DNA of 60,143 bases, counting the filler, from Platydemus manokwari (taxonomy: Eukaryota): NCBI GenBank assembly GCA_037951405.1. It is 5 parts of 5 records of this genome, joined end to end, with 100 filler letters (N's around TTAATTAATTAA, not from the genome) between each part and the next. Parts side by side here need not be neighbours in the genome. Positions count along the whole stretch, not along the records: positions 30,326 to 47,248 come from JBBMOY011133661.1; 4 more parts are not named here. One strand, written 5' to 3'. The notes below the pieces were generated by a model, which made no database searches, had not been told where the DNA came from, and saw only the letters and a program-made list of their open reading frames with translations. A program made the position numbers and the translations under genes. Shown here one piece after another: positions 18,091 through 47,248 of this stretch (position 1 is the first letter of the stretch; each line of letters begins with the position of its first letter).

Positions 18091-19780
18091 CAACTGATTG
18101 ATATGTCATTACCAAGAAAATATCTACATGTCACCAATCAATCAAATCATGGTAATGAATAATTAATAAAAATAACATTTTGAAATAGTTGGCCATCTCA
18201 GTGTTGTATAAAATTTTCTAAAACGTTGAGTTTTACATCTTTTCTTTCAAGACGAAATCTTTATTGTTGAAATGTTAAATTTAATACAGATAATGAAAGC
18301 TCAAACAATCCAATTTAATTACGAAGGTGGACTTACAAATGTATTAATTCTTTCTTTTATAAAGGCTGTACCAAAAAGAATGAAACTGTAAATAGTGAAT
18401 TTAACAAATCTAAATATTCACATGAATGTGCTGAACTCTGCTTCTTTTTGTTTCTGCTGCTTCACAAGCTTTGCTTTGCTTTTCTCCTTGATTTGATATT
18501 GGTATTATTATCAGTATAAACAAATACATTGGGACATTTGAAATACACTTCATATTGCATTAACTAAGTTCCTATTAAGATCCAAATTAAAAAAATATTG
18601 TAGAAAAAAAGTATATTTGTTTCAAATAGTACAAAACAAAATTTTATTTACAATTACAATAAATTATAACCAATTATAATCAACCACTTTGGTTCTCATA
18701 ATATTATAAAATCATAACTTTGGTTATAATATATAATTTTTTGTTAATATTTTTGTTTCTCAAGTATTAACCGGTGTACGTACATTTATATGTAATTAAT
18801 ATATTAATTATTATTAATCATATGATCATTATTATTAATTTGAATTATTATTTTAAATGAAAGATGTTACCTCACTGTGTAATGATTATCTATCAAAATC
18901 GTAGCTCAGTTTCCAATTCATAAAAAATTATTTTACTAGAAGCTCAATTTATATCTTGAAATCTATATGAACAACAATATTGCTTTAAAAATTATTAATT
19001 GTCAAGATTTTTAGATATTTTCTATGCTCGTTTTTAATTTCAATAATATAATATACCAGGATTTTATATTATTTGAAATGTCATTTGCTAATTTGTTTTC
19101 AGTAACTTTATAAAATGATAATTTTGCTCCAATATCTCTTCAGTATGTGTCATTTAGATAAAACAATGACAAGAAGTAGGATTGTACATAATAGCTCCAA
19201 AAATTGACAATGCGATTTCATGCTATTTTAGTATATTTTGAACAAACTCATGGAACTAATGAGCCCTCAGACATTGATTACAAGAATATTTAATAATTAA
19301 TTTAATAATGGAGAACCTGATAATCCATCAATAGAAACTCTCTGTGAGAATTTAAAAACGAATATACTGTTTTCCTTACTCAACACAGTTGAAATCGTGC
19401 ATGAAAATTTGACGAAATTAAAGCTTATACACTAATGAGTTATGTAAAATTTAGTACTAACAAAACTTTCTTTGGATTTAAATTAATTAATTATAATTAA
19501 ATTTATTTCTTTTTAATAAAATTCCAATAAAAATAACAATTAATTATAAAATTTATTACCAATGTTATTTTGAAAATACGATATTGGTTACCACGAGTTG
19601 CATACTTGAACAATGAAATGGAGAAATAAATGTATGATTTCTACTCCGCGAAAACATTGTTTTGTAAAACACTATTTTGTTTAAATATTACTTAATTTTT
19701 TATTAAAATTTCAACTTTGCCTAAGTAATACGTCGTAAGGTTAATTAAATTTTCTAGATCAAATTTAAGATTAAGTTAAG

Positions 19781-20777
19781 ATGTCTGAATCAGGAGATAT
19801 TAAGAAATTAACTCGTCGTGAAAAGAAGAAACAAAAATTTTTAGAAGAAACAAATGAAGATAATACAACAGTTGAAACAGATGATTTAAATCAGTTTGCA
19901 TTGTCACAGGTAAAATACATCATATTTAAAAATTCTTATGATTTCAACAGGCCACCACAAATACTAATGTGCAACAAGATAATGCTATAGACATAAAAAT
20001 TGAAAGGTTTGATTTAAGCGCTTCTGGAAAAGAATTGTTCCGAAATGCTTCATTGCAAATAACACGTGGTCGCAAATATGGTTTAGTTGGACCGAATGGG
20101 TAAATTTGAAGTCGTGCATTTTAATTAATTAATATTTTATAGTCACGGCAAAACTACATTACTACGACACATTGTAACCCGCAAACTGCAAATTCCTTCA
20201 AACATCGATGTATTACTTTGTGAGCAAGATGTTGTTGCAGACGAAACAACTGCTCTTGATGTCGTTCTGAAATCCGACGTTAAAATGATGGAAGTTCTAT
20301 CGAGAGTAGAGAAATTGAAACTGGAAATCGAAGAAAACAGTGATGCTACCGATGCCATTGATAAACTCAATGAAGGCTATGAAGAATTGAATGCAATGGG
20401 CTCTAATGCATCGGAAAGTAAAGCCCGTAGAATATTATCCGGATTGGGATTCACGGAAAAAATGATGTTGAAAGCCACGAAAGATTTTTCCGGTGGTTGG
20501 AGAATGCGAGTGAGTTTGGCGAGAGCCCTTTTCATTGAGCCGACACTATTGCTTCTCGACGAACCGACAAATCATCTCGATTTGAATGCTGTTATTTGGC
20601 TGGATAAGTATTATAGTATGATGGTTTGGATAATCTTTTGACAGATTTCTAGTTATTTACAACGTTGGAAGAAGACTATTCTCATCGTTTCTCACGACCA
20701 ATCTTTCCTGGATAACGTTTGTACCGATATTATCCACCTCAATAACAAGAAACTCGATTATTATAAAGGGAATTACT
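19781..20777 (+). CDS. ABCF1: ABC-F family ATPase (ABCF1/ABC50-like), 5' exons only; truncated by contig end
   Basis: [17 protein letters not shown]...KYGLVGPNG|HGKTTLL (Walker A), [67 protein letters not shown]...YYKGNY. Confidence 0.93.
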
Positions 20778-20931
20778 GTGAGAATATTTTTTATTTATTA
20801 ACAATTTTTACCTTAATTTTTTAATGGGAAGATTTTTTTATTGATTATTTAACACTCAAAAACCGTTTCAGTAAAGGTTCAATTTAATATTCATTTTCTC
20901 AATAATTATATTAATATTATTTATTTATTCA

Positions 20932-21031
20932 NNNNNNNNNNNNNNNNNNNNNNNNNNNNNNNNNNNNNNNNNNNNTTAATTAATTAANNNNNNNNNNNNN
21001 NNNNNNNNNNNNNNNNNNNNNNNNNNNNNNN
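20932..21031. other. artificial contig-joining linker
   Basis: N-TTAATTAATTAA-N spacer. Confidence 0.95.
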
Positions 21032-24000
21032 TGTCAATTAAAATTGTTTAATTACTACTTTTATCAATATTAAAGATTACACTATACATTCATAAACATT
21101 AAAGACTACATTATACATTAAAAAAAAATATTTGTTATTGATTACTACTTCTATACATTTATAAAAATTGTTTACTACAGATAAAACGATATTATTCACA
21201 AAAAACAATAATATAATTTATTTTACTTCATCACAAGCTACAAAATGAATGATTCAAATACCTTTTTACAACAAAAATATTTCAAATCCCTGTTATTCAA
21301 TAATTGATTATACTTATTCCCCAATTACACTTAATTTCACAATTATTTAAAATTACAAATTTACCCAATCACACTGTTTAAAAAACAGAGTCAACTGGGG
21401 GAGACCTTATTACTTCCTTCGTGTTTGAAGATATATGATTTTAAATATAGACATTAGAATATGGATGAACCCCTAGAGTTGTTATATTTATTCAAATTCG
21501 TACTTATTATTTATTTAAGCAATAATTTTTTTATCTTTCTAAATTGTTCCAAAGTTGCAATTGTTATAGAATTTTGTTATCTGTTCCAAAGTTTCCCTTT
21601 CAGTCAAAAATATTTTTTGTGTATATTTTTTTGCATATTTTGCATATTTTGTATATATTTTCTATTCCTTATTTAATGTTTTCTATGACGGACTATGAAT
21701 AATTATTTTAGTTTATTATTTTCTTTTCTCCGATTGGATTTCAAAATTATTTTACAAATCCGTCTACATTAATAATTTGAATTTCTTTTTCGTCCGCATT
21801 TTAAAATTCCGATTTCACCCAAAAATACGCCCACATTTTAAATAAATAATTTTAGCCCACATTTATAATTTTGCTTATAAATTTAATTATTATTTATGAA
21901 TATTATTATAATTTCGTCTTGAAATAAATTATTTTTTATTTTTTTGGTTCATTTTTATAATTTTTTGTTATTGTTTCATTCATTATTTTCAATAATACTG
22001 TATTTTTATACATCATTGTAAAAAATATAATTTTTGCCCATTAATAAATTTTTACATGATTTATTTACATTTTCATAAATAACATTATCAAAAATATTCA
22101 CAAATAAATCTTATCCATTTCATGCAACGAGTTTAATTATACAAAAAGTTAAAATAGAATCACTAAAGAGTTAAATAAGAGTCAAAATATGATCACAAAT
22201 TGTCACCATCGATATCCACCATCCACTTTGATCTTTGCAGGCCTTGGTAAGAAGATTGAGACTGAAATTGGTGGGATTTGCACGACAGTTAGAGGAGAAT
22301 GTACTAACAAGCGGTATGTAGACTGCTTTATCGACTAGAATACTTTGAGCCAACAGGTAAGCAGACATACCATGTCTATAAAATGAGTAAGATCTGAGAA
22401 GTAACTGCCAGTCTTTCTTGTTCGATAATTTTTGTCCGTCTAACTCTTTCACTTGATTTTCAAATGGCAATTCTTTTAAGGTCATTGTTACTATTTCTGC
22501 TTTATCTTTTGGATGCTGGTCCAGTTGTAAATCGATTATTGTCTTAAGTTGAGATAATGGCTCTTGATTATTCGATTTAAAGTGTAATATTGTGATTGTA
22601 AAATTGTAAGTTTCGATATTCAGCATTAGTAAACATACGTAACGATTATATAATTGTTATATAAGCTGTTTATAACTAAAATGATATAGAGTTAAAACAA
22701 AATGAAACAATATAATTTAAAGAACAGAGTCTATTTAAAAGGGGTAGCCTACTGAGTACGCACTTTAGCAACCTAAAGATGAGAACATAAAGTAAAATAA
22801 AACATTACCAACATACTTACTATGCAGTGAATTTAGACGAGATTTTTGTGTGATTTTATATAATATTTTTCAACTATTTAAACTAGTTGATAATAAGTAT
22901 CTTATATAATAATTATAATTAATAATAATTTAATTATTATTTTAAATTTATTATCAAATAGAGCAACGATCACCCATAATACTTGCAGCTCAAACTGAAA
23001 ATTTTCAGATTCAGAGATTAATGTCTGACGATTGATAAAAAATTTACGAGTGAGCTGAATGCGTGCGCGGACATAGTATTTGCAATATTTTATCCTTAGG
23101 GTAATGAAGCTAAATTGGAGGGATATTATTACTATTCATCATAGTAAACATATTGCTAATGAATATCCAATTAAATAACTGAATAATGTGATCACAATTA
23201 GCCGACCGATGTTGTACTATGTTGAGATCGATAAAATATTAAATTGTTTGGTCTGTTTTATTATCTTTTTACCTGGTTCTAACTTTAGTCTCTCAAGGAG
23301 TTTCGACAATAAGTATGATGATTATACTGTTAATAAACTGCATGTCTAAAGATCTTTTTAATAATAATTTAAATCATAGCACTAGATGTTAACTCTATTA
23401 AATATAACCAAGACGTCGATCTTTTTACTACATAAGATTAATGAGCAATAATAAATGTTATGTTGATAAGGATACAATAAACAATGCGATTGTTAAACGT
23501 AAATTAGAACTGATTATGGTCAACGAATGAGATTATTGCAATGTAATTGAAATTATGTAACAACAAGACTAATTCAAGCGCTCAAAAATCGATCGACGTG
23601 CAATTGATAAATTCACATTCTAGCCGATACAATATTTGTGATGAATTATAATGTATCTCCGCACACCGATTGATCCGAATGAATGTCTATGATTCTTCGC
23701 TTTTAAATATCATTAAATATTTAGCTGTGTGATGTTGTGCGATTTTCGCTGTGGATTTTAGTGAGGTGGTTTTGTGGGTGTTAGTTGACATTTTAACGCA
23801 TACGGTGCGTGGGTGATCGTGTTTATTGATCTCTTAATTATGCAAGTATTTTGCATTTCCACTGTTATATGACTTTATTAATTATCTTTATTAGTAATTT
23901 CTATATTTATTAATTATTTATATACTTTATATTTATTTATATTTATTCGCTTTGCTTTTTACAACCCAAATAAATTCCCTTACTCCTACATAAAAATAAT

Positions 24001-30325: not shown

Positions 30326-33300
30326 TTAATTCTTCGTCCAAACAATATTTCAAAAGGAGAATATTGAATTGAACTTTGATATGTTGCATTGATGATGAAT
30401 TCTATCCGCAGTATTAATTTATCCCAAGCCTGTTTCTCTGATGCCATCGTTGTTACCACCATGTCTCTGACCGTTCTAATAATCCTTTCGGCTAAGCCAC
30501 TTGCCTGATGTTGGTACGGGGAGATAAATTCTTGTTTCATTCCAAATCGTGTTGCTAATTCTTTCATTTCCCTTCCTTCGAAGACTCTACCCCGATCAGT
30601 GAGCATTTATTTTGGAGCACCATGTCTGTAGATCCATTTATTTATGATGGCCTTCAAAATAGCAGTTTCGTCTTATCGAATAAGTGACACCAAGCTTACT
30701 AACTTACTGAATCTATCTACTATAACCAACAAATATCTCGTTTTAGTCATAAATTCCCCAAAGTGCGCAATATCAACAACGATCTGTTCCAGAGGCCCAA
30801 ACTTTTCCTTTGGAATCATAATTTCTTAAGTTTACCCAGTGTATACCTTCCGTTTAGCACAAATATCATAATTCCGTACTTCATGTTCGATGCTTCATGA
30901 CATATTTGGCCAGAAGTAAATTTTTTGAATATAATCTACCAATTTCTTATTATCAATATGGCACAACTCTTCATGAAAATATCTCGTAAGTTTTTGTGAA
31001 TAAACCTCTAGTACAATAATTAGCTTTTTTCCATTCTCATTATACACCACCATATCTTCAAACAATTCATATTTCTCTAAACTGTTAAAATATTTTCTTT
31101 TCTTCACCTCTGAATTGACTTCTGCTTCTGTTTTCCTTAACCATTTTCGAATGGAACCAACGACAGTATCTTTTTGTTGAATCTTTCTTAGTTCGTCATT
31201 ATTTTGCAATTGAGTGCTCGACAACATTGATAAACCGAGATTTTGGTTTAGCTTTTTTAGCGTCTTGATGCTGAGTTAAGCATTGTGAACAAAATTCTTC
31301 GCCTATCCTTGAGAGTCCATCTGCATTTCCGTGATCTAATCCTTTCCGATATTGAAGTTCAAAATTGAATCCAGATAACTTTGCAAACCATGTTTGAAAC
31401 TGAGGGCTTATCGGTTTGTTAGTTTTCTTCATGTATGTCAAGGCTTTGTGATCGGTGCGGGTCACAAATTTCTTTCCCAACAAATAATGTTTAAAATGCA
31501 TAGTAAACTCGTGGATTGCCAAAAGCTCTTTCCTCGAGACGCAATAACTTTTTTCATGGCTGTTAAGAGTTCTAGAACCATAGGCTACTACTCTCTCTTT
31601 TCTATTGTCATCCAGCTGGCTTAGAACGCCTCCAATCGCTTCAAAACTAGCGTCGGTGTCTAAAATCATCTTTTTGTTTGGATTTGGAAAAGCAAAAATC
31701 GGAGCTGTGCTTAATTGTTCCTTAAGGTTTCCAAAACTTTCCTCACACTCTGTACTCCACTCCGATTTTTTGTCACTTCCAGTCATCATCGCATATAACG
31801 GAGCTGTAATTAATGCATAATCCTTGATAAATCCTCTGTAATAATTACATAATCATAGGAACGACCTCAACTGAGGGATGCAACCAGGTTTAATTGCTTC
31901 CTTAATCTTCTTTACTTTATCGTCATTAGTTTGTATACCTTCTGAACTGACCGTATGACCCAGGAAATCCAATTATCTAATGCCAAAAGTGCATTTCTCG
32001 GGATTGGTTTTTAAACCTGATGATTCTATTATCCTGAGTACCTTGTCCAATTTCTCATTGTGTTCCTTTACTGTTTTTTCATGCACTAAAATATTGTCCA
32101 GATAAACCAGAACCCCTTTGTAAATCAATTCCTTGAATATTGTATATATTAGACTCTGAAACGTTGCTGGCGCGATACATAATTCAAAAGGTAGTCTGTT
32201 AAAAAAGAATTGCCCAGTTCTTGTGCTGAACGCCGTTTTCATTTTAGAATCTTCCTCCAGTTCACCCTGATAATATACTTGGATTAAATCTATCTTGAAG
32301 AAAACCATCGCTCCATACACTGAGTCCAATAACGTTTGAATGTCAGGTACCGGAAAAGAAAACTTCTCAATCTGTTCGCTTAATTTTCTGAAGTCTAAAC
32401 ACATCCTGATCGATCCATCGTTCTTAGTAACCACGAGCAAAGGAGAGTTTCAAGGGCTCTTGCAAGGTGTTATGACATTACTTTCCAAAAGATTTTCTAT
32501 CAATTCTTGAATTTTGGTTTCTAAATTTATTGGCTGCTTTCTGAGATTTTGAGCAATAGGTTCCCTTTTTGTACGGATTTCGTGCTTCACCAAATCTTAT
32601 TTAGTTCCAAATCGAACCGAGAAGCCATAAAATTGAGCCATTTTCTTTATTACACCTATTCAATGAAATATCATTCTGGTCAGCATTACTCTTCAGTGCC
32701 ATTTCGATTCTATCTTGGTCGCTGTATTTCTTTCCCACATCCTTGGCATCAATTGATTTTATCCCTGCATGGAATATTCCACAAGTCTTCATCATATCAA
32801 CTCCTCCGATAAATAATGGTGAAATTTCTTTTACTACAATGATCTCCTTTACTAGAATTTTGTTGTTCCAAACTATTCGGATCCTTATTTTACCTAGACA
32901 CGATTTGTGCGTATTGGAGAATACGCCAGCCAATCGAACATCCGAATTTTTAATCTGCGCCTCTCCAATGCGCTTCTAATTGCTCTTGTTCATTACTGTT
33001 ATTGATGCACCAGAATCCCATAAAATTTCAATATGTGTACCGATGCACCCAATTTACTCCACTGTCTACCATCTGCTTTCTGATACATCTGTGAATGCTT
33101 CCTTTTCTTCTTGGCGTCTTCCTTCTTTACGTCTATTCCATCTTTAGCTGATATGTCCTATTGACTCAAACCTACTGACGAGATAGGCACAGGAGGTTGA
33201 TTCCAGTTTTTTTGTCTTCCATAGAGAGTGAGCTTACACAATCACTTGCTTCACTTTCAGTTTGAATATTAGCTTCATCTTCTCCCTCTTGAATGCACAA

Positions 33301-34296
33301 TATTCTCCTTGAACTGTTTTAACTAGCCTTACTGGTAAATGACATTCTCTTAACGAATGTCCTTCTATCCGCATATCAAACATTTATTCCGAAGTGGACA
33401 TTCAAACTTCCGGTGTCCAAAATCACCGCATCAAAAACAAGCACCTTGTTTCAAATAATTGCCACGTGGTGTGGGTTTTCCTCTACAATCGTTGTAGAAT
33501 TTAGAAGCATTGATCTTGTTGGTCTCTCATTGTTTGGAGATTCAGTGTGATTAACTGATGTTCGATGATATTCTTTTACACCAAAATCCCTTTTCTGCAC
33601 AATTGTACTTGGCTTTTTGAACGACGTCTCCTTCTGAAAGGTCTTTATTGGTTTACTTTGAAATACTGACTGAGCATATGTCTTCTTGATGGCTTTTATG
33701 GGCTTCGTCGAAGTCAACTTCTCAAAATTGACAGCCAGCTCTCTTCTTCTATCGTCGGACATTGCAGGGTCGAGAGTAAATGACTCTTTCAATTTCTTGC
33801 TATTTAGACCTTGCAGAATAAATAGTCTTGAAATTTCTTCAAGAGTGTTTTTCTTGTCAAACACCTCCAAAACTAGCTTCTTTACTCGAAGTTCATAACT
33901 GCGATATTTTTCATCTGGTCTTTGTTGCATTGCTGCCAAATCCTGAACCTTGTCATATACTGTTTTGGCATGAGAAAATGTTTCTAAAAACCATTTCTCA
34001 ATTTCTTCATTTGAAACAGCCTCTTTGAAACTGCTGAATTCTTCCCACAGTTGTTCGGCGTCATCTCTCAAAAGCATGTCAAATGAGAATGATAGTTCCA
34101 TTTGATTAAATGCCTCGAAATCTTTGGTTGTTCGGATCCATTTCTTACCGTCTTGGAATGATGAATCGAAGAATGATGGTTTCGGAATTAATAACTCCTG
34201 CGTTTTTTGTGGCAGATTCGCAAAAATTTTCTGCCTCTCCTCTTGTTTAGCTCTAGTCAGAGCGTTAATTTCTGTGTGGTAAGTCGTGTCCATCAA
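30326..34296 (-). mobile_element. decayed Ty3/Gypsy LTR retrotransposon A (gag-PR-RT-RNaseH-IN); 3' end cut by contig end
   Basis: gag ORF 33451-34296, protease LWDSGAS (~33010), RT IRMCLDFRKL...VYLDNIL, RNase H ILDTDAS...TRTDHKAL...NADGLSR, integrase TDRGRVF...GLAERIIR. PR-RT-RH-IN order is Gypsy. Frameshifts and stops throughout. Confidence 0.95.
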
Positions 34297-35009
34297 TATT
34301 TTATTCTATTTCAAAATCACACGCGTTTGTTTTTAATATTAAAACAAATCTCAATTTTTTATCTAACTTTTATAAATATCAGTATATGCTTTGTACATAA
34401 TTATTTCATAATATCAAAATCATAAAACAGTTACAAATCGAATATTATAAATTTTTCATAAAATCAAATATCCCAAAAATATCAGATAATCAGATAATGT
34501 CATATCAGATAAAATTCAAAAGATTGATGATCACACATATTTAATATTTTAATAGGAGAACTTCTGATTTGAGATTCTTTAGTATTTGATTTGGAATTTG
34601 AAGATGAATGATATTTGCTAGCCTTAGTCGTCCAAACCCACGCTCCAATTCTTCTTTCCCAGGACCCCTTGTTACTTTTTCTCAATATAATGAATACAAT
34701 AAAAATCTTATTATTTATTATATTATTTTGATGAGCTTACGTGCGTATTCGTTACGTGTTGGAGAAAAGGTCAATAAATTTTTTAAATTAATTTATCCCA
34801 TAATTATTAAAAATGAAATTAATTTTCTTTTATTATTTTTTAATGCTATCTATTAAAATTGTTGATATTTTTCGATGATTTAATTCTTACAGATTGTGAT
34901 TGATTTGACACACACTATTCGTGCTGTTCTTCACTGCTTTGAATTCAATAGTTTTTAATATCAAATATTTAATCGAATATTTTTAATTTTTATTATTAGA
35001 ACTAATTGA

Positions 35010-35117
35010 ATCACTGACACTTGTAGACACAATATATTTATTGAAAAAACTAAATTAATCCGCCTTTCAATTATTTAAACAAATACAGCGTGTTTGATTA
35101 TTTAACCACGTTGCTCA
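35010..35117 (-). repeat. 3' terminal direct repeat (LTR) of Gypsy B
   Basis: Aligns by eye with 39030-39135 (shared AATTATTTAAACAAATACA...TATTTAACCA). Begins TG immediately after the PPT. Confidence 0.8.
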
Positions 35118-38100
35118 CCTCCTCTTAAGTTCCGCTCCATTGTTTCACCCACTCTAATAATCTGAATTTTATCGCATGAGGGAATTGAATCTCCACTAGT
35201 ATCCATTCTTCTTCCTTTTATGGCATTGTCTCTCCCACCTGAACAATTCGATGTGTTCTTCTTCCCCTGTCTGGCTTAGACATTATGTTGGCTGCCACTT
35301 TAGAATTTTCTCTACCTGCTAGTGCAATACCATTTCGAGTTTGGTTCTTGTGACTTACATACGTATGGACATTGATCTTCCCTTCGTAGATTATCTTCAA
35401 AGGCGAGAACTTCGTTGTTTATTGATGTGTTGCGTTTATGTAGAACTCTATCCTTGACAACAATTCAGCCCAACTTTTCTCGGTCTCTTACCCTTTAAGG
35501 AAGTTTTTATCATATCTCGTACTGCCCTGATGACTTTTTCCCCTATCCCGTTCTTGTTTTATTCAAAATTTTGAACACGCCTCTCATATAAATTTACCTC
35601 AAAATTGTTTCCCATTATCAGATAAATTCAAAACGATAAATCCACGAGTTCAAGATGACCTGGAAGATTGTATTTTCGTTCTGCTTAGATGTAGCAGTGA
35701 ATCTCACCAGTTTGCTGAATCTATCGATAATGCCTACTTGCCTAAGTGGCGGAGTTCCTCGTGACCTGTCTTGACAAATTAAGCTGCAAAAAATTTATTG
35801 GCATTATAGCAGCCAAACCCTTATCTTTCTCCAGCATCAGCGTATTGTCCACCACCTTCAGCTTATTTTTAATTCTCGAAAGTGAATGTTTATTCCTGAA
35901 TTCCGTGCTCATTAAAGTTGTTTCATCATTTTGCAATCTGAACGTCTCCACTTTTAATGCATCTTTATGCTGTGCTTCCAACATTATCTCCGATTTTATT
36001 AATATTTGGGCTAAATATTTGGTCCACCGAGTTTCGTCTTGCTTTTTTCGGATTTTTTCCGTTTTTGCATCATCATGACTCGTCTGCATATACTGTCTCG
36101 TTGATCCTAGACAACCCATCTGAGTTCCTACGACTCTCTCCTTTTCTGTATTTTAAATCGAAATCGTATTCTGACAGCGCCGCCATCCGTGTTTGAAATT
36201 GAGAGCAAATCCGTGTTCGTGTCTTGTACAAGAATACAACTGCTTTGTGATCGATCCTTGCGATGAATTTCTTTCCGTACAAGTATTGTTTAAAATAAAT
36301 AACATGCTCGTGGATAGCCAGTAGTTCCTTCCTGGTAACACAATCCCCGTTCTCTTGACTAGTCAGTAATCAAGACCCATAGGCTATAACTACCTCTGTT
36401 CCTTTTTCAGTAACTTGGCTTAGAGCAGCCCTGATTGCACCAAAACTCGAGTCCTTATCGAGTACAAATATCATATTTTTCTTGGATAATTCTAAATTGG
36501 TGATTCACATAGTGCAGACTTTAGTTTCAAAAAACCTGTTTGACACGACTCTGACTATTGCATTCCTAATCTCCACATGCGCCCGCGGTGTATAGTAGAG
36601 TCGCTATTAAAGCATAATACTTTATGAATCACCTGTAATAGTTTGTCAGCCCTAAAAATGATCACAGTTTGCTCGTACACTGTGGTGCTGGGGTAGCTCG
36701 TATCTGTTCGATTTTGTCGCAATTAGTTTGTATGCCCTTGGCACTGACTATTTGGCTTAAAAACCTTACTCTATCTTTAAATTGCGTACATTTCTCCGGA
36801 TTCACTTTCAGACCCGACTCTTGAATTCGTAGAAACATGGCTTCCAGTAGATAGTCATGCTCTTGCTGAGTTTTTCCGTATATTAGCACATCTTACAAAT
36901 ATAGCAAAAGACCCTTAAGTAACAATCCATCCAACAGCTTGTGCATTAGTTTTTGAAAGGTTGCCGGTGCTGTAGATAAACTAAACGTGAGTCTGTTGAA
37001 ACAGAATTGGCCAGTTCTTGTGCTAAAAGCTGTTCAATCCTGAGATCTTGAACTTAGTTAGACTTGGTAATAAGTCTGTCCCAAATCTATTGAGAAGAAA
37101 TATTTAGCATCCGCAAAACAATCTAGAAATTGATGGATATCAAGCATAGGAAAACTAAATTTTTCTGTCACTCCGCTGAGTCTTCAACAATCCACACACA
37201 TGGGTCCTTTTTTCCTACGATGACCAGTGGTGAATTCCAAGCACTCTTGCATGGTCTTATTACTCCTCTTTCGAGCAGGTTTTTTATCATATCTTCAACT
37301 TTTGCTTATAAGCGCATAGGCTGTCTTTTGGGTTTCTGCGAAATAGGATTTCTGGTAATTATAATATCCTGAACAACTAGGTTGGTACTGCCTAGATTCA
37401 ATTCCAAAGCCCTGAATATATTTCCGTATTCATTGATGGATTTTCCAATTCTACCCGTGTTCCCAAAATTGATCTTTTCCAATGCGAGTCTGGATCTTTC
37501 CTCATCTGTATAATTTTCATTAAATTGTGATGAATCGATTGTGGCCATCTCTTTCAGCTGAATCTCGAATGCATTTATCATGTCAACACCTTTGATAAAG
37601 TCGAGGCAAATTCTTTTTGTAATAAAAACTCTGAGTTTCCGTTTCTTTTCTTTCCACTAGGCAATCACATCTGAGTAACCCAGAGGACGTTCGGTATCCG
37701 TTGAAAAAAATCTACTAAGTTTAATCAAACTATCCTGCAATTTTGAGCTTCCCACTTTCTTCCAATAGTTCTCGCTCATCACTGTGATAGACCCCTTCGA
37801 ATCCCACAACATTTCTTCTTCAGCTCCGTTGATCAACACGTTACTCAACACCCTATTATCGTCTTTCTTAAACATCTCTTCACATTCGGTTCCATTTCGA
37901 ATTTCCTTGTTATCTATTGATTCAACCCCACCGACGAAATGTATGCGGCGGAGCTGCCATGGTTTATTTGGTCTTCTACCTCGTGCATTACTGGGTCTTC
38001 GATTGAATCAAATTGATCCTCGTTTTCGACCTGAATACATAAAATTCTACTTTTTACTCTGTGTCTGTTACCTCGTATTAAATGGCATGACCTGAAATGA

Positions 38101-39029
38101 CGGTCTTCTTGTCCACATACTAAACATCTGTGCCTTAGAGAGCACTGGCCTCTGTAATGTTTTCTTTTTCTACAGCAGAAGCAATTGTCTCCGCGCAAGC
38201 TATATTCTTTTGAATCTGGCATGCCTAGACACTTATTGTGCAGTGTCTTGGCCATGTATTTCATTGAATACACTCTACCTGAAGCGAATTTATGTTCCGT
38301 GTTCTGATAATATGTGATGGTTTATAATTACTTGATTCGTTTCTTTCTTTTTTGAACTGGTTATTCCACCTGTAACTTCTTCCAGTTTTTAGTGCTTGAA
38401 CATCGCTGTCTCTACGGATTGCATTCACTCCCTGGGGATCTCGTTGAAAACTTTGTTTTCGATTTTCGAACATCTTTTCAACACTTCTAACTTCTATTAT
38501 ATCCATGTTTGAATTTAGGTCAAGATCATCTTTTAACCCATTGGATCGTGTTCTCTTGCTGATGATATCTATCACCATGGAATCTTGCTTCAATTCGGAA
38601 TTAATCACCGCTTAAACCAATCTGTGAACCCTCAAAGGTGGCAAACCGTTCGCTCCCCAATTGTTTAACATTAGCAAGTTCGACAATCATATCCATTATA
38701 GATTTTTTGATTATAAATGTATCTTCAAAGCACGATTTAGCTAGCTCTTCTGTGGTATCTTCCGATTTGAATTGGAATTTCTTCCATAAAATGCCTTCCT
38801 CGTCTGAAAGCACTAAATTAAAAGCATTAATCAGGCTGAGACTATTAATTAATTGCCACTCCCCTTTATCTTTCATCCACTTTGCGGCCTCATTTGAATT
38901 TCTTCCATCGAATTTTCGAATATTGAAATTGAGAGCTTCCTGCCCTTCTCCCGCCAAGCTTTGTAGTAGCTGTGTCTTCTGCTAATTCCTTGTAATTACA
39001 TTGATCTGTAAGGCATAGTCGACAGTTAC

Positions 39030-39135
39030 ATCACGGGCATTTTTAGACATAATACTTATTCGAAAAACTAAACTAAGTCGCCAACGAATTATTTAAACAA
39101 ATACAATGTGCTTGTTTATTTAACCATATTATAAC
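39030..39135 (-). repeat. 5' terminal direct repeat (LTR) of Gypsy B
   Basis: Partner of 35010-35117. Confidence 0.8.
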
Positions 39136-39539
39136 CTATTTCATGTATTTTAGACACCAACAGAAGCGACTTCTGTCTACTATAATACCGAAGTAGCAAC
39201 GCGCAATATATATATATATATATATATATATAACGCGCAATAATGAAATTAAGATATAGTCACAGGATCACTAGTTAAGTCACCTGACATCTATTTGCAA
39301 TTTCTGGTGCTTGTATGAACCTAGGTGGGATCTATGCTCGGCTTTGCTCTTCAAACTAATATTTTGATAGTTATAAGACCTATTTTAGTTTACTAATTTT
39401 AAATTATGAATTCAAACATTGTTGTTATTATAAGTAGTAAGGTTTAATTTATATTCAATTGCCGGAAACCATTCCTTATTTTTGTTCTGATGATGAACAA
39501 CGCATGCAATCAATCAATTTATTATCTTTGACAATACTG

Positions 39540-39800
39540 CGTTGATTATATTAAATTTAATATGGTTAAATATATCTGAATATCTTTCTTGCTTAGTTTT
39601 GTTTTAAAGTTACCTGGTACTCAGACACCACTTGTAGTTTTATCTTTGAGGATTTCAGATGTGTTAACGTATTTAATCATGTTGTATAATTTTGAGTTTT
39701 CTAAAATCATAACACATTCTATTTTTGTTATTGTGCTTATTGATCACAATATTGATATTTTGGGTCAGCTAATAATGGTTGATTAATCGGTTAATATAGT
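39540..39800 (-). mobile_element. highly decayed LTR-retrotransposon RT fragment
   Basis: Minus strand IVINKHNNKNRMCYDFRKLK resembles the RT motif 'VV.KKDG..RMC.DFRKLN'. Confidence 0.4.
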
Positions 39801-40527
39801 GGGAAACTTTTCAACGTTTCATAAATATCTTTTGAAGTCAGATACATAGGTTAGTCGCTGAGAATTATTACACATTTTAACGTCTTTACAAATTGTACGG
39901 TTATACTGAAAACTTAAATTATTCACATGTTGATAAACAAAATAATATTGTGTTGGAATCTATTGTTTCTTTAGTAACAATATATCGCCGCATATTGCAT
40001 ATCTTACATCATACATATCGAAATATCAACAGTGCTATAATGAGATTTTAAATCAAGTATTATTGTGTTAATTGATTATATTATATAATAATTTATAACA
40101 CGCAAAAATAACTTGACTGCCAATGGTCAAATAATTGGTGGAATTCAGTCATCAATTATCGATCTTTAGCAATTTTTTACACGATAACAGTTCACATTAT
40201 CATTGCTTTCCATGATTAAAAATAACTTAAATTTGACCACGTAGTTGAGATAAATATTTATTCACTAAATAATGTCCACAACCTAAACTTGTATTAGAAA
40301 TAAATTAATGGATGCGTTACAATAGTACTTGATATAGAAATAACATCCCAGTTGGAATTATTTATAACAATAACTCTTACAATAAAAATATCGAAAAGGT
40401 GGTTGGCCAGTAAAAAATTTTCTTCCATATAAAACATCAATATTAAATATAGACAGTTTAAAATAAGAAAATCTGTTTCATTGAATAAAATATATTACAA
40501 AAACATCAAAACTTATATTAAAATTAA

Positions 40528-43500
40528 TTACAAAAATGCTCTAAGGTTCAAATAAGAATTCTGTAATAGTTCGGAACTTGGTTCTTTCGAGTGTTGCTGG
40601 TATTGATTTTGAGTCTGTTGCAGTAAATGTTGATTCAAGTCACCACTTTGGATGGGGAAATTATCCATTTTTGGAAGAATAAAGCATGGATTATTGTTTA
40701 TTGGTGACAGCGAGAGTGGCTGTTGTGTGTAATATGGTTGTTGCTGCTGCTGTTGTTGTTGTTGAAGTGGAACAGTGGGAATGGAATTGAAATTCTGTGG
40801 ATTGGCATTGGCAGTGTTATATTGTTGGTATGGAGGCTGTGAATGTTGTACCTGATGATTCTGATAAATAACCACTGGATTATTTAAATTCAACGATTGA
40901 GGTATGATATTGGGATGCATGACGACCATTTTATTTTGCTGATAACGAGAATGAAGCACAGCCGCTAATTGCATCCGTGAAGCATTTTTATTCGTCAATG
41001 CTAATTGAGAATTAGGACATATTGGCAAATAAGTAGACATGGTTTCTGATGGATTGGAACCGGATATTACATTTCCATTATTATTGGTGATTTGTGGATC
41101 GATTGGACCGGGATTTCTTATTTGATTGAGTGAGTTGTGGAAATTTTTATTGGTCAATGAATTTTGATTATTCATCGAAATATTGGGGATCTGAGTATAA
41201 CTATTCAATGACATGGTCGGCACATTTAAATAATTGCGTAATAAAGAATTATTGGATTCGATTAATAAATTATTTGTGACTGGATTTGATGAGTGAAGGC
41301 TGTTATTTAAAGGATCAGTGGAAGAATTGGTAATATGTTGAGGATTTACTGCGGGACTCATTGTGGGCTGTTGATTGTTGCCCATTACAATGAAATTGTT
41401 TAATCCAAGAGCATTGAATGATGATATTTGATTATTCAGTGATGGATTTGTGATTGACATGCTTGGATTTGGAGCTGGTGTAAGATTAGGCATTGAACCG
41501 ATTTGTTGAACACCAATTAACTGAGTCGTGTCATGTGTGACAGCATTTAATGGATTGATATTATTTGAATAAAATGATTGGATGGAATTTGCTTGAGGCA
41601 TATTAATCAAAGGTGCACTTGGAACGGGTCTCATGTTGTTATTGAGAGGAGTTTTGCGAGGAAGTTCAGCTCGATAATCGTTAATTGTTCTCAACACTGG
41701 TACTTGAGTCGGTTTAGGAAGCTCAATTTTAGGTGGAGTAAGTTCTTTGGGAATATCTCTCGATTCATAATGTCGAGAACTGACAAAATCATCATCAACT
41801 GTGGATATTTGTTCTGGTTTTTCCTTAATGGTTTGTATTGGCGGTTTGGGTTGATCAACCACTTTTCGGTTCTTAAAATTTTTTATCAGATTCATCATAC
41901 TTTCACTACTGGTACCAGTAGTTGGTTTCAGTTCATTGGTTTGTGAAATAAGTTTCTTTTCAATATTTCGATATGTTTTTAATCCTTTCGATTTCAAACG
42001 AATCGGTGGAACTGATAAGGTTTTTGGTGATGTGAACGATTTCGATTTTACTTTAGGTTTGATTGGTAGTGGGTGATTTTTATTGGGCGATTTGAGGCCA
42101 ATTCTAGGAGAAATTGGTAATTCTGGATTATTCGATGTATCATTAATTATATTCGTATTAGTCTTGTTGACTTTTTCCTCGACTAGTGTATCTATCTTTT
42201 CCAATGGCATTGGCGTTATGGTATTATCACTGTTTCTCCAACATAAATGATCCTCATGGAAACGAATGACAAGCTGTGGGCATTCAACATTTGCTCTACG
42301 AGCAGAAACCAAATTAGCAGAATCTATATTTTTCCTGCAAAACATCCTCTAATAAGACAAGGGACACATTTTGGTACAATATTAAACGAAAGGAATTTAT
42401 CATTTATTTCAATCAAAACATTAACTAATATCAATGTTTAGTGATAATTTTTAATAAAATATTAAAAAAACACAAGAAATTATAATAATATTGTAATAGA
42501 TGATTAAGCTCAGTTGCATCAATAAAGCGAACCTTATTTACAAATGGTATCTAAAATGTTTGGCCATTTCGAAATATCATATGTTTAGAACAGTGCTTGT
42601 CTAAGAGTGCTCGAATACATATAAATAATTCTATGAATATTCGATGTTTATTAAATAATAGATATCAAGTTAACATCTGTACGTAGTGAAGGATTAATTA
42701 ATCGGGATCGAAGGACATGTCAGATGACGATTAGAATCTAATAGATTTAACAAATATGAATTGTTCCAATGAAGTATGTTGGGAAAGATTGATTATATTT
42801 GCTAAAATACACTAAATTAATTTATTAAATTTTATAAAGCCAATTTAATTGAAGCTTTATAGACGCACTGGCCATGAATATAGTTAACCAATTAAGGGAC
42901 CTAATTATAAATCTATCTATCTATTTATAATGGACATCTCGCAATAATGAGTATCTTGGTAGGAGTTTTTCAAAAAATGTTAAGTTCTTGTAAATTGATG
43001 AAATCTTAATATTTTTGTCGTTATTACAACTTGATAGCTTAAAATTATCAAGCCCTTAATATATAATAATAATGATAATAAAAAATCATTTTTATAGGAA
43101 AGTAAATTTATATAAAATTATATTTGATATTTATAAAAAGTACTTAATTGAATAATTGATGAAAATGATTATTTTCAAACATTTTATAACGCTGTTGGCG
43201 ACCACATTTGTGGGGGGGGGGTGGCAGGGTACATGATTTCTGTGAGTGCGTGTAGGCACCCAAATCCGATCTCACAGCACTCAACAAATTACATCATAAA
43301 ATGATTTCAATAAATTATGAAAAATCTGATAAAAATCAATAATGAACAATGAAAAAATTCTAGAAAAAACACTTCTAATAGACATGAAAAGACGATAAAT
43401 TTGACAGAAAATCATAATGATAATAAAAGCATAAAATATTGATAAATTTCAATGATATTGGTTTTTTAATTTAATTTTTTTTTATCAATGTGCACCTCAA

Positions 43501-45037
43501 GACCGTGCTGAATTGGAAAATAATATCATTGTCAAGCATCAAAGGTTTGGCTAAGCCATTCGAGGATTTTATTTGTTGATATAATTCTTAGAACGAATTA
43601 TTTTACATAATAAATAAATGGATGGAAAAAATTACTAGTGGAAACATTTAACATCAGTTTGCAAGACAACCAGAATCCAACAGTGCCCTTTTAAAAATTA
43701 ATTTAATCATTTGACAATTTTTTCTCCCTCATCATTTCAAATACTGAAAAAAATCTAATCAATATTTGAGTACTGAATTAATGGTAAGAAAATATTTATA
43801 TCAAATCAAAATAATTCAATCAATCGTACTCACCATTTTATCAGAAACATTAATTGATCTTTAATAATACCAGCTGACAAAATCGCTTCCGGTTCTCGCG
43901 ATCGCGGAAATCCTCGCGGCTTTACAGGAGGCTCCTACAAAATTGGTTCTAAGCTTATTTCATGTTTCAATGCGTAATACTTTGATCAAGACTTCTTCGG
44001 GTAATTCTTCGAGCACCAATGAGTCGTCCGTTGAAATGGATTTTCTTTTCTTCAATTTTTTTAATTTCTTTTGTCGTTGAAGAAATTCCTGAATCGGAAA
44101 ATAATCGAGTCTCAATATTCATTCATCATACTTTTATCAATTCGGGACACTCTAGATTTTCTTCTGGTTCCCATGTATTTTCAGAATCAGGAAAACCTTC
44201 CCATTTCAGGAAAAATCTGCGAACACCATTACAAACTCTCATTTTCAAAATCTTTTCAACCATGAATATCTCTTGGACATTCTGTGGCATGTTTTCGGGG
44301 AAAAATGAATTGGGATCTTTGGAATTTTTGCTTTCTGTTTTTTTCGACGATCGTACCGATTCGACACTACAATCAGATTCATTTCCTGACCGATTAGCAA
44401 TCGATGATTCCATAGATTTATTTTTATTGTCAGAAGAAGTTATTTTATCTTCATTTTCATTTATTTGAACATTATCATCATTATTAATTATTTCCGTCGT
44501 TAACGATTTCAATTTGACAGAATTATTCTCGCTTTCATCTGAATTCAATTTAAATTTTTTCTTCTTTTTGGATTTTTTTGTTTTTTTCTTTGAGATTTTG
44601 TGGATTTTTACTGGCTTAATGATATTCGATTCGGGTGGACAATCTGTTAATTTCAAAGCAGATCCTTCACCATCGTTGTTACCATTTAAACTTTCAGAAG
44701 TCAGACTAATCGGAATGGAATTCTGAATGTGAACATCATCAATCGAAGCGTGATCGTTATTGTCCGTATTATTTTGAATGTCATCTTTATTATCATTGAC
44801 TATATGTTCACAATTTTCAGATTCAGCTGGAATGACTTTCTCGTTATTTGTTGATTCAGTACTATTTTCAATCTCATTAATAACAATATTTTCATTTTCA
44901 TCACATTCATTCCTTAATATCGTTACTTCTTCATCACTCTCATTATTACTGATATTATTTTCAATTTTTTCTTGGTCTTGATTATTTTCGTTTTCTCGAC
45001 TTTGAGCTTCTTTATTTTCCCAATTAAGAAGAAATTC
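40528..45037 (-). CDS. HP1-like protein: chromodomain + chromoshadow domain + very long N/Q/P-rich C-terminal tail (exons 45037-44132, 44088-43981, 43934-43834, 42334-40528; 5' exons missing)
   Basis: CD: [46 protein letters not shown]|EFL. Basic hinge [13 protein letters not shown]: [30 protein letters not shown]|[32 protein letters not shown]. All junctions are phase-consistent GT-AG. Confidence 0.9.
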
Positions 45038-45140
45038 CTTGAAAAAAAGGAAATACAAACATGAAACCAAAAAATGATAGTTGTGGAAAAAATAAAACAT
45101 TATATAAATGGAAATTTTATTGAAAATCATTATCTTAGAG

Positions 45141-45423
45141 CAGTGGTTTTCAACCTTTTTGCTGGAGACAAACCCCACGGAAACAGTCCTCTGGCTCGAG
45201 GAACCCCTATGCAATAATGTAGGGAGTTTAATTCTGTTAAATTTAGTATATTTAAACAATAACTAATGATAAAATGATATAAATAATAATAATAAAATAG
45301 ATTTTCGAAATTGAATTTAACATGTTATTTATTTGTTCGTTGTTCTAATTTAGAAATTGCGGAAACCCTGGAGTGTAATGGTAGAACCATAAAGTTCCGC
45401 AGAACACTAGTTGAAAACCACTG
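45141..45423. mobile_element. hAT MITE (283 bp) in the HP1-like gene intron
   Basis: Perfect 14-bp TIRs CAGTGGTTTTCAAC / GTTGAAAACCACTG and an 8-bp TSD tcttagag / tgttagag (7/8 match). Confidence 0.92.
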
Positions 45424-47248
45424 TGTTAGAGAGTTCATTTTCATTGATGTTGATCATTCATATGCAGAGTCACTGGTATGATATGATGTCAATAATTATA
45501 CTGAATAACTAGAACAGTATATGATAAAGCAGGTTTAAAATGTTGCATTCTGTAAATCTATTTAGAAGCCAACCTTGATTAAATTTGTACAAATAATTTG
45601 AGAATATTTAAATAAAAAGTCAATTTTATAACAATTTAAATGAAAATTCGAGATTAATTATCATTTGACTATAAATTTCATTTTCCTGCAGTATTTTGAA
45701 ACATGAGAATCACTTATTATCATTATAAAAAATACTGACATGATCCAATTCTATCAATGTATATGATATTTTATTAGGTTATAATTGGATTCAGAACGCA
45801 GTAAAAACACATCGAAGTAGGGAAAAATATATCAAACTTGTTTTAAATGATCTTCATTTATAAACTTATTAATAATATTAAAAGATTATTTAAAATTTAC
45901 AAGTTTATTATTGTTTAAAAATTTTTCATTAACCAATATCTACGACTAATTCCATTTATTGTTTTCGAGAATAGTGTGCGTAAAAAGCAAATTTAGTCTG
46001 GGAATTCTCAGAAATACAATATTATGTGCTGTAAAATATTTAATGCCAATATTATGTTTTCATGTAACAGGATGAGTTTACGAACGCTATCACCGTTTAC
46101 CACATATTTTTGACGCTCAAATTGTTAAATGTTATTCATAAAAGATATTAAATAAAAAACAATGTCACCATAAATCACGGGTTATTGATATTTAATAAAA
46201 ATCTGATTGTGTTTAAATATTCGAGGCCAGAAAGGATTATATATTGTAATTACTCTAAAGCACAAATCATAAAGGGAGACTACAATTGTCTGAAATCATT
46301 GAAAACCTAACACTGTTCATGAATCATTGAAATGAAATGTATTCATTTTTGGAAAAAAAACATTTCTTATGCTCTAAATTGGATTGGAATAAATGTGATT
46401 TCAAAAAATTATAAATATCACGAATAAAAAACTAATTAGTGAGGAATAACCAAAATCATTACAAGCTTTATTTGTAGGACATTTTAATGGCAAAAATTGA
46501 ACTGAATGATTTATTTGTGACTCCCATTCAAATATAATCAATATGATTTGTAAATAAATAAAATTATACACGAATAAAACGTGCAAAATATCAACGAAAT
46601 GTCTATCATATAGACCAAGACCATTTAATCCATTTTCGCTTTATCTTATCTCTATCATTTCAAAGGGTTTCTTGAAGGTCTAACTATTTATCAAATTGGA
46701 AATAACTGATATTTTATTTATCAATAATTTTGAATGAAAATTTTTTTCCATTATTTCTCGTGTCTCTCATAGAATTTTAGTCGAGGATTTAGTTGTTGGA
46801 GACAAAGAAATATTTATCATCAAAATATATGGGAAGAAAATAATATGGAAATGAAAACAATACCAAATAATGTTGAAATAGTTTGTAAAATAATGAAATA
46901 ACAATTCATTTCATTCTCATTTATTATTACGTAATTTTTTATTAAGGAAAATAATATATTATATAGGCTAGCTTTGTAATAGAATATATTATATCCATAA
47001 AATTATAATTATGTCATCAATTATATCATCTCAGAATAAATTCAATTTTCAAAACATTTCAAATGACAAAGCGAATAGTAAAAAAGTTAATAAATAATTA
47101 AATTAATCATTTAATACTACTCACAGAATTATTGATAATAAGTAGTACTAAAAACAAAATCCAATAATTAAAAATACATTTACAAAATACGTCCAATATC
47201 TAATTCAGTGCAGCGTTTTACTAGAATTTCGAGACAAATTTGCAGTTT

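What the first reader, a model, noticed from the sequence alone, without database searches (positions are those of the whole stretch)
40528..42334. HP1-like protein with a ~570-aa N/Q/P-rich (prion-like) tail fused after the chromoshadow domain
Seen: the exon that completes the CSD (…[15 protein letters not shown]) stays open for ~570 more codons, first K/P/S-rich and then N/Q/P/M-rich with a polyQ run. Established: canonical HP1s are ~170-220 aa, end a few residues after the CSD, and form condensates through CSD dimerisation and short IDRs. Inference: this is an HP1 derivative with a large low-complexity domain that could act as a transactivation or phase-separation module, possibly a lineage-specific (Rhino-like) neofunctionalised reader.
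Basis: partly seen in the sequence, partly recalled or inferred. Interest (0 to 1): 0.75.

Follow-up and report, generated by a model that had tools for sequence, protein, structure and literature searches.

The report
Planarian HP1 protein with giant disordered tail
A flatworm gene for a heterochromatin-reader (HP1) protein really does carry about 570 extra, unstructured amino acids after its last domain; a planarian relative already in GenBank has the same layout, so it is an unusual lineage-specific HP1 variant, and whether it is expressed could not be checked.

Summary
On the minus strand, a GT-AG intron (43833..42335) splits the chromoshadow domain (CSD). The last exon (42334..40528) finishes the CSD in 33 codons and stays open for 568 more, against 39-53 stops in other frames (P about 1e-17). 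An independent contig of the one public run holding this DNA matches it without a difference. The upstream exons encode a roughly 250-aa acidic N-terminal region, an HP1-type chromodomain with the aromatic cage kept, and a basic hinge.

The tail has two parts:
- About 230 aa are basic and K/P/S-rich. They align with the only relative found, Dugesia japonica "HP1-like" QEP99640.1 (808 aa, about 480-aa tail), and share two conserved short motifs.
- About 340 aa are almost uncharged and N/Q/S/L/P-rich. They include a Q9 run, meet the 30-Q/N-per-80 criterion and are not conserved in Dugesia.

AlphaFold confidence is very low, which fits disorder. An exhaustive HMMER search with the proximal tail found only the Dugesia protein. 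No RNA run holds the locus, so expression and the splice junction remain untested. The same architecture is already deposited, but I found no paper describing it. The "Rhino-like" reading is not supported, and function is inferred only. I rate it a new variant of a known kind, of moderate interest.

The parts
44132..45037 (-). Exon encoding a ~250-aa acidic N/E/S/K-rich N-terminal region (net charge -20) followed by most of the chromodomain (Pfam match 44266..44132). The acceptor is tttttcaag|GAATTT and the donor is AAA|GTATGA. There is no usable ATG inside, so at least one 5' exon lies upstream and was not found.
   Evidence: Open frame and sequence. Pfam Chromo E 3.4e-14. PDB CBX3 E 2.1e-18 with cage residues F/W/F aligned. 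The same acceptor (..FK|EFL..) appears in the related genomic contig L001.
43981..44088 (-). Hinge exon of 36 codons: [36 protein letters not shown]. It holds the end of the chromodomain helix, a basic patch and an acidic stretch. It is flanked by mini-introns of 43 nt (44131..44089) and 46 nt (43980..43935).
   Evidence: Sequence. tblastn with the Dugesia protein ([15 protein letters not shown]|EPAVKPRGF) fixes both junctions.
43834..43934 (-). First half of the chromoshadow domain ([33 protein letters not shown] + TG). The donor is ATG|GTGAGT, phase 2.
   Evidence: Pfam Chromo_shadow positions 1-20 (13.4 bits, E 0.08, below cutoff on its own). 70% identity to Dugesia residues 251-293.
42335..43833 (-). 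Intron of 1499 nt (GT..AG) that splits the chromoshadow domain. It is AT-rich (GC about 0.25-0.27).
42235..42334 (-). Start of the last exon: the second half of the chromoshadow domain ([34 protein letters not shown]).
   Evidence: Pfam Chromo_shadow positions 21-52, E 1.9e-7. CBX5 147-179 and CBX1 alignments, with the I of PQ-VI and the final W kept.
41554..42234 (-). Proximal tail, last-exon residues 34-260. It is basic (net +14) and K/P/S/N-rich, and it is conserved with Dugesia japonica HP1-like residues 330-545 (about 36% identity).
   Evidence: Composition.
41872..41910 (-). Conserved motif 1, [13 protein letters not shown] (Dugesia SSNSMMDLINNFK). It is the only tail segment with pLDDT above 50 and is predicted helical.
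   Evidence: Alignments. AlphaFold2.
41671..41769 (-). Conserved motif 2, [33 protein letters not shown] (Dugesia [35 protein letters not shown]). It contains a PxVxL-like PKIEL that is PKFEL in Dugesia.
40531..41553 (-). Distal tail, last-exon residues 261-601. It is N/Q/S/L/P-rich and nearly uncharged. At least 30 Q/N per 80 aa is reached in windows starting at residues 452-513. A Q9 run lies at 40764..40738. It has no convincing counterpart in Dugesia.
   Evidence: (the GTT repeat on the + strand is the polyQ).
40528..40530 (-). Stop codon TAA. A candidate AATAAA lies about 270 nt downstream (40262..40257); it is unverified.

Best explanation
This is a real protein-coding gene for a lineage-specific (planarian/dugesiid-type) long form of heterochromatin protein 1.

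Shown:
- The gene has at least four exons on the minus strand.
- It has a canonical HP1-type chromodomain with the methyl-lysine aromatic cage kept.
- It has a basic hinge.
- Its chromoshadow domain keeps the dimer-interface Ile and the peptide-binding Trp.
- About 568 further codons follow in the same exon, so the tail cannot be skipped without an unconventional internal donor.
- The tail has two parts. A basic proximal module of about 230 aa is shared with the Dugesia japonica HP1-like protein and carries two conserved short motifs. A distal low-complexity module of about 340 aa is uncharged, N/Q/S/L/P-rich and lineage-specific.

Inferred:
- The protein reads H3K9 methylation through its chromodomain and dimerises through its CSD, like other HP1s.
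- Because the tail starts directly at the canonical C-terminal extension, it probably alters or occupies the CSD peptide-binding platform.
- The basic module would add nucleic-acid or nucleosome contacts and partner docking through the two motifs.
- The Q/N-rich module would add weak multivalent self-association (condensate-like) or act as a glutamine-rich activation-type surface.
For: - Open frame: 601 codons against 39-53 stops in other frames, P 1e-17 to 1e-23. Third-codon-position composition matches the chromodomain exon while positions 1 and 2 differ.
- Domains: Pfam Chromo E 3.4e-14 and Chromo_shadow E 1.9e-7. PDB alignments to CBX3, CBX5 and CBX1 keep the key residues.
- Splicing: GT-AG junctions restore the frame and match the Dugesia protein residue for residue.
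- Relative: Dugesia japonica QEP99640.1 has the same order of parts, and its tail aligns at 38% over 262 aa, E 8e-34.
- Second genome: a second planarian genomic contig (L001) has the same exon structure through the first CSD exon.
- Assembly: the contig of X1 is identical across the exon.
- Disorder: mean pLDDT 32, with only motif 1 above 50. The tail has no Pfam domain.
- No GTRAG donor-like site lies inside the last exon.
- The Q/N criterion is met.
Against: - There is no transcript evidence for this species. The only public run holding the stretch is DNA-like, so the splice junctions, the 5' exon and translation of the tail are inferred.
- The distal 340 aa have no homologue anywhere, so their maintenance rests only on the open frame.
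- I assume the Dugesia record is mRNA-derived but could not verify that.
- The AlphaFold run used only two sequences, so low confidence is weak evidence of disorder.
- Every functional statement (H3K9me binding, dimerisation, condensates, activation) is untested.
- Orthology to the published Smed-HP1-1 and Smed-HP1-2 (PMC3639387) could not be settled.
Confidence: 0.75

Rival explanations
1. The tail is translated, but its distal N/Q-rich half is a neutral, mutation-driven low-complexity expansion (replication slippage plus AT bias). It would have no specific role. Only the chromodomain, the CSD and perhaps the proximal motifs would matter.
For: - The distal 340 aa have no counterpart in the Dugesia orthologue, which has a different, charged C-terminus.
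- The N-terminal region of the same gene also diverges almost completely between two planarian genomes, which shows fast-evolving flanks.
- The local genome is 25-37% GC.
- The tail has no domain and no confident structure.
Against: - 341 codons remain open where about 6% of random codons would be stops (roughly 3e-10 from the rate). The frame is therefore at least being kept.
- The polyQ is encoded by mixed CAA/CAG, and only that 27-nt stretch scores as a tandem repeat. This is not a recent pure slippage product.
- The very low charge over 340 aa is a consistent feature rather than random AT-biased composition. The AT-biased N-terminal region of the same gene is, by contrast, highly charged.
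Confidence: 0.35
2. The main product is a canonical short HP1. Transcripts would usually end or splice shortly after the CSD, and the long open frame would be used rarely or only in a minor isoform.
For: - There is no RNA data for this species.
- Canonical HP1s, including the schistosome SmCBX (CSD at residues 167-218), end just after the CSD (PMC6023120).
Against: - The open frame is far too long for untranslated sequence.
- The proximal tail is conserved at protein level with Dugesia, whose deposited protein reads straight through.
- There is no in-frame stop and no GTRAG donor-like site in the exon.
Confidence: 0.08
3. The locus is a decaying paralogue (pseudogene) or an assembly artefact.
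For: - The gene sits next to broken retroelement fragments and a very high-copy repeat.
- The 5' exon was not found.
Against: - All exons are open, all junctions are GT-AG and in frame, and the key CD and CSD residues are kept.
- An independently built contig is identical over the last exon.
Confidence: 0.03

Closest known systems
Dugesia japonica 'polycomb group heterochromatin-associated protein HP1-like protein' (QEP99640.1 / UniRef100_A0A5J6BTI0, 808 aa)
   Same: - It has the same order of parts: N-terminal region, chromodomain (79% identical), basic hinge, CSD, then a long tail.
- The first 230 or so tail residues align, including SSxSMMxLIxNFK and [22 protein letters not shown]..LRxINxYR.
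   Different: - The Dugesia tail is about 480 aa, against about 568 aa here.
- Its distal part is charged and not Q/N-rich (at most 24 Q/N per 80 aa, against 33 here), and it does not align.
- The N-terminal regions are unrelated in sequence.
- I found no publication describing the Dugesia protein's tail.
Canonical HP1 proteins (human CBX1/CBX3/CBX5, Drosophila HP1a, Schistosoma SmCBX)
   Same: - The chromodomain and the CSD are clearly of this type (E 2e-18 and 1.6e-9 to PDB chains).
- The aromatic cage, the CSD Ile and Trp, and the basic hinge are kept.
   Different: - Canonical proteins are about 170-270 aa and end about 10-20 residues after the CSD.
- This one adds about 250 aa before the chromodomain and about 568 aa after the CSD.
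Schmidtea mediterranea HP1-1 / HP1-2 (Zeng et al. 2013, PMC3639387)
   Same: They are planarian HP1-family genes. HP1-1 is neoblast-specific and linked to transcriptional activation through FACT and Pol II. That is the kind of role a Q-rich tail could serve.
   Different: - Their sequences and lengths were not available to me.
- None appeared in three word searches covering lengths of 167-1414 aa.
- Orthology is therefore untested. The paper states that the genome has only two HP1 genes.
Drosophila Rhino (HP1D)
   Same: It is a lineage-specific, fast-evolving HP1 paralogue that is longer than canonical HP1.
   Different: - Rhino's extra length lies in the hinge, not after the CSD.
- This chromodomain is much closer to canonical HP1 than to Rhino (2e-18 against 4.7e-10).
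Polycomb-type CBX proteins (CBX2/4/8) with long disordered regions
   Same: They combine a chromodomain with a long low-complexity region. From general knowledge, that region drives compaction or condensates in CBX2.
   Different: They lack a chromoshadow domain and end in a Pc box. Here the CSD is present, and the chromodomain scores better against HP1-type chains.

Membership tests
HP1 / chromobox HP1 subfamily | N-terminal chromodomain (Pfam PF00385) | tested here: met
   E 3.4e-14, 52.9 bits against a cutoff of 25.1. The best PDB matches are CBX3, CBX5, CBX1 and HP1a.
HP1 / chromobox HP1 subfamily | Aromatic cage for methyl-lysine (F/Y, W, F/Y; positions known from the CBX3/HP1 literature) | tested here: met
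   The alignment to CBX3 chain 3tzd_A pairs query eiFmvek...lkWegF with EFVVEK...LKWKGF. Which residues form the cage is from my own knowledge. Binding itself was not tested.
HP1 / chromobox HP1 subfamily | C-terminal chromoshadow domain (Pfam PF01393) | tested here: met
   The domain is split over two exons, which were searched separately by reference. The second half scores 31.4 bits, E 1.9e-7 (cutoff 22.4). The first half scores 13.4 bits, E 0.08. Together they cover profile positions 1-52. The Dugesia orthologue's contiguous CSD scores E 6.4e-20. The joined sequence was not built or searched.
HP1 / chromobox HP1 subfamily | CSD dimer-interface Ile and peptide-binding Trp | tested here: met
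   [14 protein letters not shown] aligns to PQIVIAFYEERLTW of CBX5 and PQVVISFYEERLTW of CBX1. The Tyr of FYEE is His here. The role of these residues is from my own knowledge.
HP1 / chromobox HP1 subfamily | Protein ends a few residues after the CSD (short C-terminal extension) | tested here: not met
   568 codons follow the CSD in the same open exon. This feature is typical of the family rather than strictly defining.
HP1 / chromobox HP1 subfamily | H3K9me2/3 binding and homodimerisation | not testable with these tools
   It needs peptide pull-down, ITC, or SEC-MALS.
Rhino-like (HP1D) germline readers | Chromodomain closer to Rhino than to canonical HP1; germline piRNA-cluster role | tested here: not met
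   Rhino chains score E 4.7e-10, against 2e-18 for CBX3. Expression and function are not testable here.
Prion-like / Q/N-rich domains | At least 30 Q+N in an 80-residue window (Michelitsch-Weissman criterion, from my own knowledge) | tested here: met
   The maximum is 33 per 80. There are 57 qualifying windows, starting at last-exon residues 452-513. Residues 241-450 reach only 19-26 per 80.
Prion-like / Q/N-rich domains | PLAAC-type HMM score; self-templating aggregation or phase separation | not testable with these tools
   PLAAC and IUPred are not available. Hydrophobic content is about 27%, which is higher than I would expect for classic yeast prion domains. Behaviour needs experiments.
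Polycomb-type CBX | Chromodomain plus C-terminal Pc box, no chromoshadow domain | tested here: not met
   A CSD is present. 'Polycomb group' in the Dugesia record's name is the depositor's wording only.

The most novel reading that the evidence does not exclude
Planarians may have evolved an 'activating' or scaffold HP1. The conserved proximal tail motifs (an amphipathic SMMxLIxNF helix and the YESRDIPKE...PPKxELPKP block, which has a PxVxL-like core) would either fold back on the protein's own CSD platform or recruit planarian-specific partners. The uncharged Q/N-rich distal region would drive condensate formation or act as a glutamine-rich activation domain. That would give a molecular basis for the non-silencing, FACT/Pol II-linked HP1 function reported in planarian stem cells (PMC3639387).
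Probability: 0.15. Interest if true: 0.65.

Novelty: new variant of a known kind. Interest (0 to 1): 0.4.

Why it matters
HP1 proteins are small, highly conserved adaptors. Their behaviour, including dimerisation, partner binding at the CSD and phase separation, is tuned by short disordered segments. A natural HP1 that places about 570 disordered residues directly on the CSD's C-terminal extension, plus about 250 acidic residues in front of the chromodomain, is an extreme test of how far that tuning can go. It occurs in animals whose stem-cell biology already points to an unconventional HP1 role. If the tail is expressed and functional, its two conserved short motifs are concrete handles for finding planarian-specific HP1 partners. 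If not, it is one more example of low-complexity growth in an AT-rich genome.

Tried and rejected
- RNA evidence: the look-up of sequencing runs returned only one DNA-like run and no RNA holder. Read laying could therefore only confirm the assembly.
- More orthologues of the tail: none turned up. The searches were the word search with the last exon, the exhaustive HMMER search with a two-sequence profile of the proximal tail (only Dugesia) and the word search with the Dugesia chromodomain-to-proximal-tail region (only fusions and unrelated chromodomain proteins).
- Chromodomain search: it gave a second planarian genomic contig (L001), but that contig ends at the first CSD exon, so it says nothing about the tail.
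- Dugesia's distal C-terminus and N-terminus: tblastn against the piece found no hidden downstream or upstream exons.
- ESM Atlas feature search of the proximal tail: the best score was 0.77, below the chance level.
- Literature: searches for a described long-tailed planarian HP1 found nothing specific.
- Rhino-like reading: rejected on chromodomain similarity.
- Internal alternative donor: there is no GTRAG in the last exon.
- Exons were handled one by one by reference.
- 5' exon: it was not located.
Full report
**What is there.** The piece (30326-47248) is AT-rich, with 25-40% GC. On the minus strand, between about 45037 and 40528, lies a multi-exon gene.

- Reading the minus strand in three frames and inspecting the sequence gives four exons: 45037..44132, 44088..43981, 43934..43834 and 42334..40528.
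- They are separated by GT-AG introns of 43, 46 and 1499 nt.
- Each junction keeps the frame. Each junction also reproduces, residue for residue, the contiguous sequence of the one related protein found (CPELIK|EFL, EEV(L/I)IK|EP(P/A)VKPRGF, FLIKW|KN).
- The first of these exons begins at an acceptor (tttttcaag|GAATTT) and has no plausible start codon. At least one 5' exon is therefore missing and was not found in the 2.2 kb upstream.

**The observation.**

- The last exon is open for 601 codons and ends in TAA at 40530-40528.
- Its first 33 residues are the second half of a chromoshadow domain. They match Pfam PF01393 positions 21-52 (E 1.9e-7, above the gathering score) and CBX5/CBX1 CSD chains (E 1.6e-9 to 2e-8).
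- The preceding exon supplies profile positions 1-20.
- The remaining 568 codons have no Pfam domain.
- The open frame is not chance. The exon's own base composition gives a 6.2% stop probability per codon, so P is about 1.6e-17 for 601 codons. The other frames have 39-53 stops. 300 shuffles never gave more than 192 open codons in any of six frames. Third-codon-position composition matches that of the chromodomain exon.
- A 3057-nt contig built by Logan from the only public run that holds this DNA is identical over 40300-42966. A frameshift hidden by mis-assembly is therefore unlikely, although that run may be the window's own source.

**The rest of the protein.**

- The large upstream exon encodes about 250 residues of acidic N/E/S/K-rich sequence (net charge -20), followed by a chromodomain (Pfam E 3.4e-14).
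- The chromodomain's best solved relatives are CBX3, CBX5, CBX1 and Drosophila HP1a (E 2e-18 to 5e-15). Rhino (4.7e-10) and Polycomb-type CBX proteins (about 1e-9 to 1e-7) score clearly lower.
- The three aromatic cage positions align as F, W, F, as in CBX3 (the identity of the cage residues is from my own knowledge).
- The hinge exon has a [10 protein letters not shown] basic patch.
- In the CSD, the Ile of PQ-VI and the terminal Trp are kept. From general knowledge these are needed for dimerisation and PxVxL-peptide binding.
- By its domains this is an HP1-family protein, not a Rhino-like or Polycomb-type one.

**Anatomy of the tail.**

- Residues 34-260 of the last exon are basic (net +14) and rich in K, P, S, N, I and T.
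- Residues 261-601 are 17% N, 13% Q, 11% S, 10% L and 10% P, with only 19 charged residues in 341.
- Windows of 80 residues starting at 452-513 hold 30-33 Q+N, which meets the classic Q/N-rich criterion. Residues 241-450 hold 19-26.
- The Q9 run (40764..40738) is encoded by mixed CAA/CAG. It is the only tandem repeat in the exon.
- AlphaFold2, run on the last exon with the Dugesia tail as the only other row, gave mean pLDDT 32. Only residues 141-154 exceeded 50, as a predicted short helix. This fits disorder, but the alignment is very shallow.

**Relatives.**

- A word search with the last exon found one protein, Dugesia japonica QEP99640.1 / A0A5J6BTI0. It is named [quoted passage not shown] and is 808 aa long.
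- It has a chromodomain (residues 181-227) and a CSD (274-325) followed by about 480 further residues.
- Its chromodomain is 79% identical to this one.
- Its CSD second half plus tail aligns at 38% over 262 residues (E 8e-34).
- Two blocks stand out: SS(E/N)SMM(N/D)LI(K/N)NFK and YESRDIPKE(L/Q)TPPK(I/F)ELPKP.Q..LR.IN.YR. The first block is the only confidently modelled helix.
- Beyond about residue 300 of the exon the two tails do not align convincingly. The Dugesia distal part is charged and not Q/N-rich, with at most 24 Q/N per 80 aa.
- tblastn with the Dugesia protein found no hidden exon for that distal part in the piece.
- An exhaustive HMMER search of 1.84 billion representative proteins with the proximal-tail profile returned only the Dugesia protein.
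- A further word search with the Dugesia chromodomain-to-tail region found no other long HP1.
- A chromodomain search found a genomic Logan contig from another planarian-like genome (L001). Its chromodomain region is 88% identical, and identity is 79% over the 91-aa alignment reaching upstream of it. It has the same acceptor, hinge and first CSD exon. Its N-terminal region is almost entirely different, and the contig stops before the last exon.
- The family is thus visible in three planarian-type genomes. The tail is visible in two of them, and both flanking regions evolve fast.

**Expression.** No RNA run holds the stretch, and the single run laid is contigs of DNA. Indirect support for read-through comes from three points:

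- The length of the open frame.
- Protein-level conservation of the proximal tail with a deposited Dugesia protein. I assume that record is cDNA-derived but could not verify it.
- The absence of any GTRAG donor-like site inside the exon.

**What it most likely does (inference).**

- The chromodomain and CSD features predict H3K9me reading and dimerisation.
- The tail starts exactly where the short C-terminal extension of canonical HP1 helps clamp PxVxL peptides. It should therefore modify partner binding.
- The conserved block contains a PxVxL-like PKIEL, but it is PKFEL in Dugesia, so self-binding is only a lead.
- The basic module could add DNA, RNA or nucleosome contacts and partner docking.
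- The uncharged Q/N-rich module could add multivalent self-association or act like a glutamine-rich activation region.
- The main rival for the distal half is neutral low-complexity growth in an AT-rich genome. I give that about 0.35.

**Comparison with the literature.**

- Zeng et al. 2013 (PMC3639387) report two HP1 genes in Schmidtea mediterranea. HP1-1 is neoblast-specific and acts with FACT and Pol II. The text gives no lengths, and neither protein surfaced in my searches, so orthology is open.
- The schistosome SmCBX is canonical, with its CSD at residues 167-218 (PMC6023120).
- I found no paper describing a long-tailed flatworm HP1.
- The architecture is therefore deposited but, as far as I could search, undescribed.

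- The spliced protein was never joined. Exons were searched and folded by reference only.
- Retroelement fragments were only described.

**Verdict.** This is a new variant of a known kind, an HP1 with a bipartite disordered C-terminal extension of about 570 aa that is shared in part with Dugesia. Interest is moderate (0.4), limited by the lack of expression data and by the non-conservation of the prion-like part.

Noticed in passing
window 30328-32440 (minus strand), probably extending to ~34300: Fragments of an LTR-retrotransposon pol gene lie on the minus strand, broken into separate open frames. The order along the minus strand is reverse transcriptase (RVT_1, E 9e-22), then RNase H (E 5e-33), then weak matches to the integrase zinc-binding and core domains. 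A 281-aa open frame upstream (33454-34296) has no Pfam match and could be gag-like. I only described these fragments.
   Followed up: partly
window 35745-38957 (minus strand): A second cluster of 90-125-aa open frames on the minus strand has no Pfam match. One of them (37917-38273) has a CCHC-like Cys/His pattern. It is possibly another decayed retroelement.
   Followed up: no
window 45088-45400: This is a very high-copy repeat just upstream of the chromodomain exon's acceptor. Summed word depth in run X1 is 7,800-23,700, against about 14-25 elsewhere, with many short contigs and loose ends. Two copies of a gtggttttcaac-containing segment lie in opposite orientation at about 45150 and 45420, which looks SINE- or MITE-like.
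   Followed up: partly
window 44089-44131 and 43935-43980: Two mini-introns of 43 and 46 nt sit next to a 1.5-kb intron in the same gene. The related contig L001 has introns at the same places.
   Followed up: partly
L001:366-1502: In the related planarian contig, the roughly 270 aa before the chromodomain are unalignable with the window's N-terminal region. The 90 aa around the chromodomain, by contrast, are 79% identical. The N-terminal region therefore turns over very fast.
   Followed up: partly
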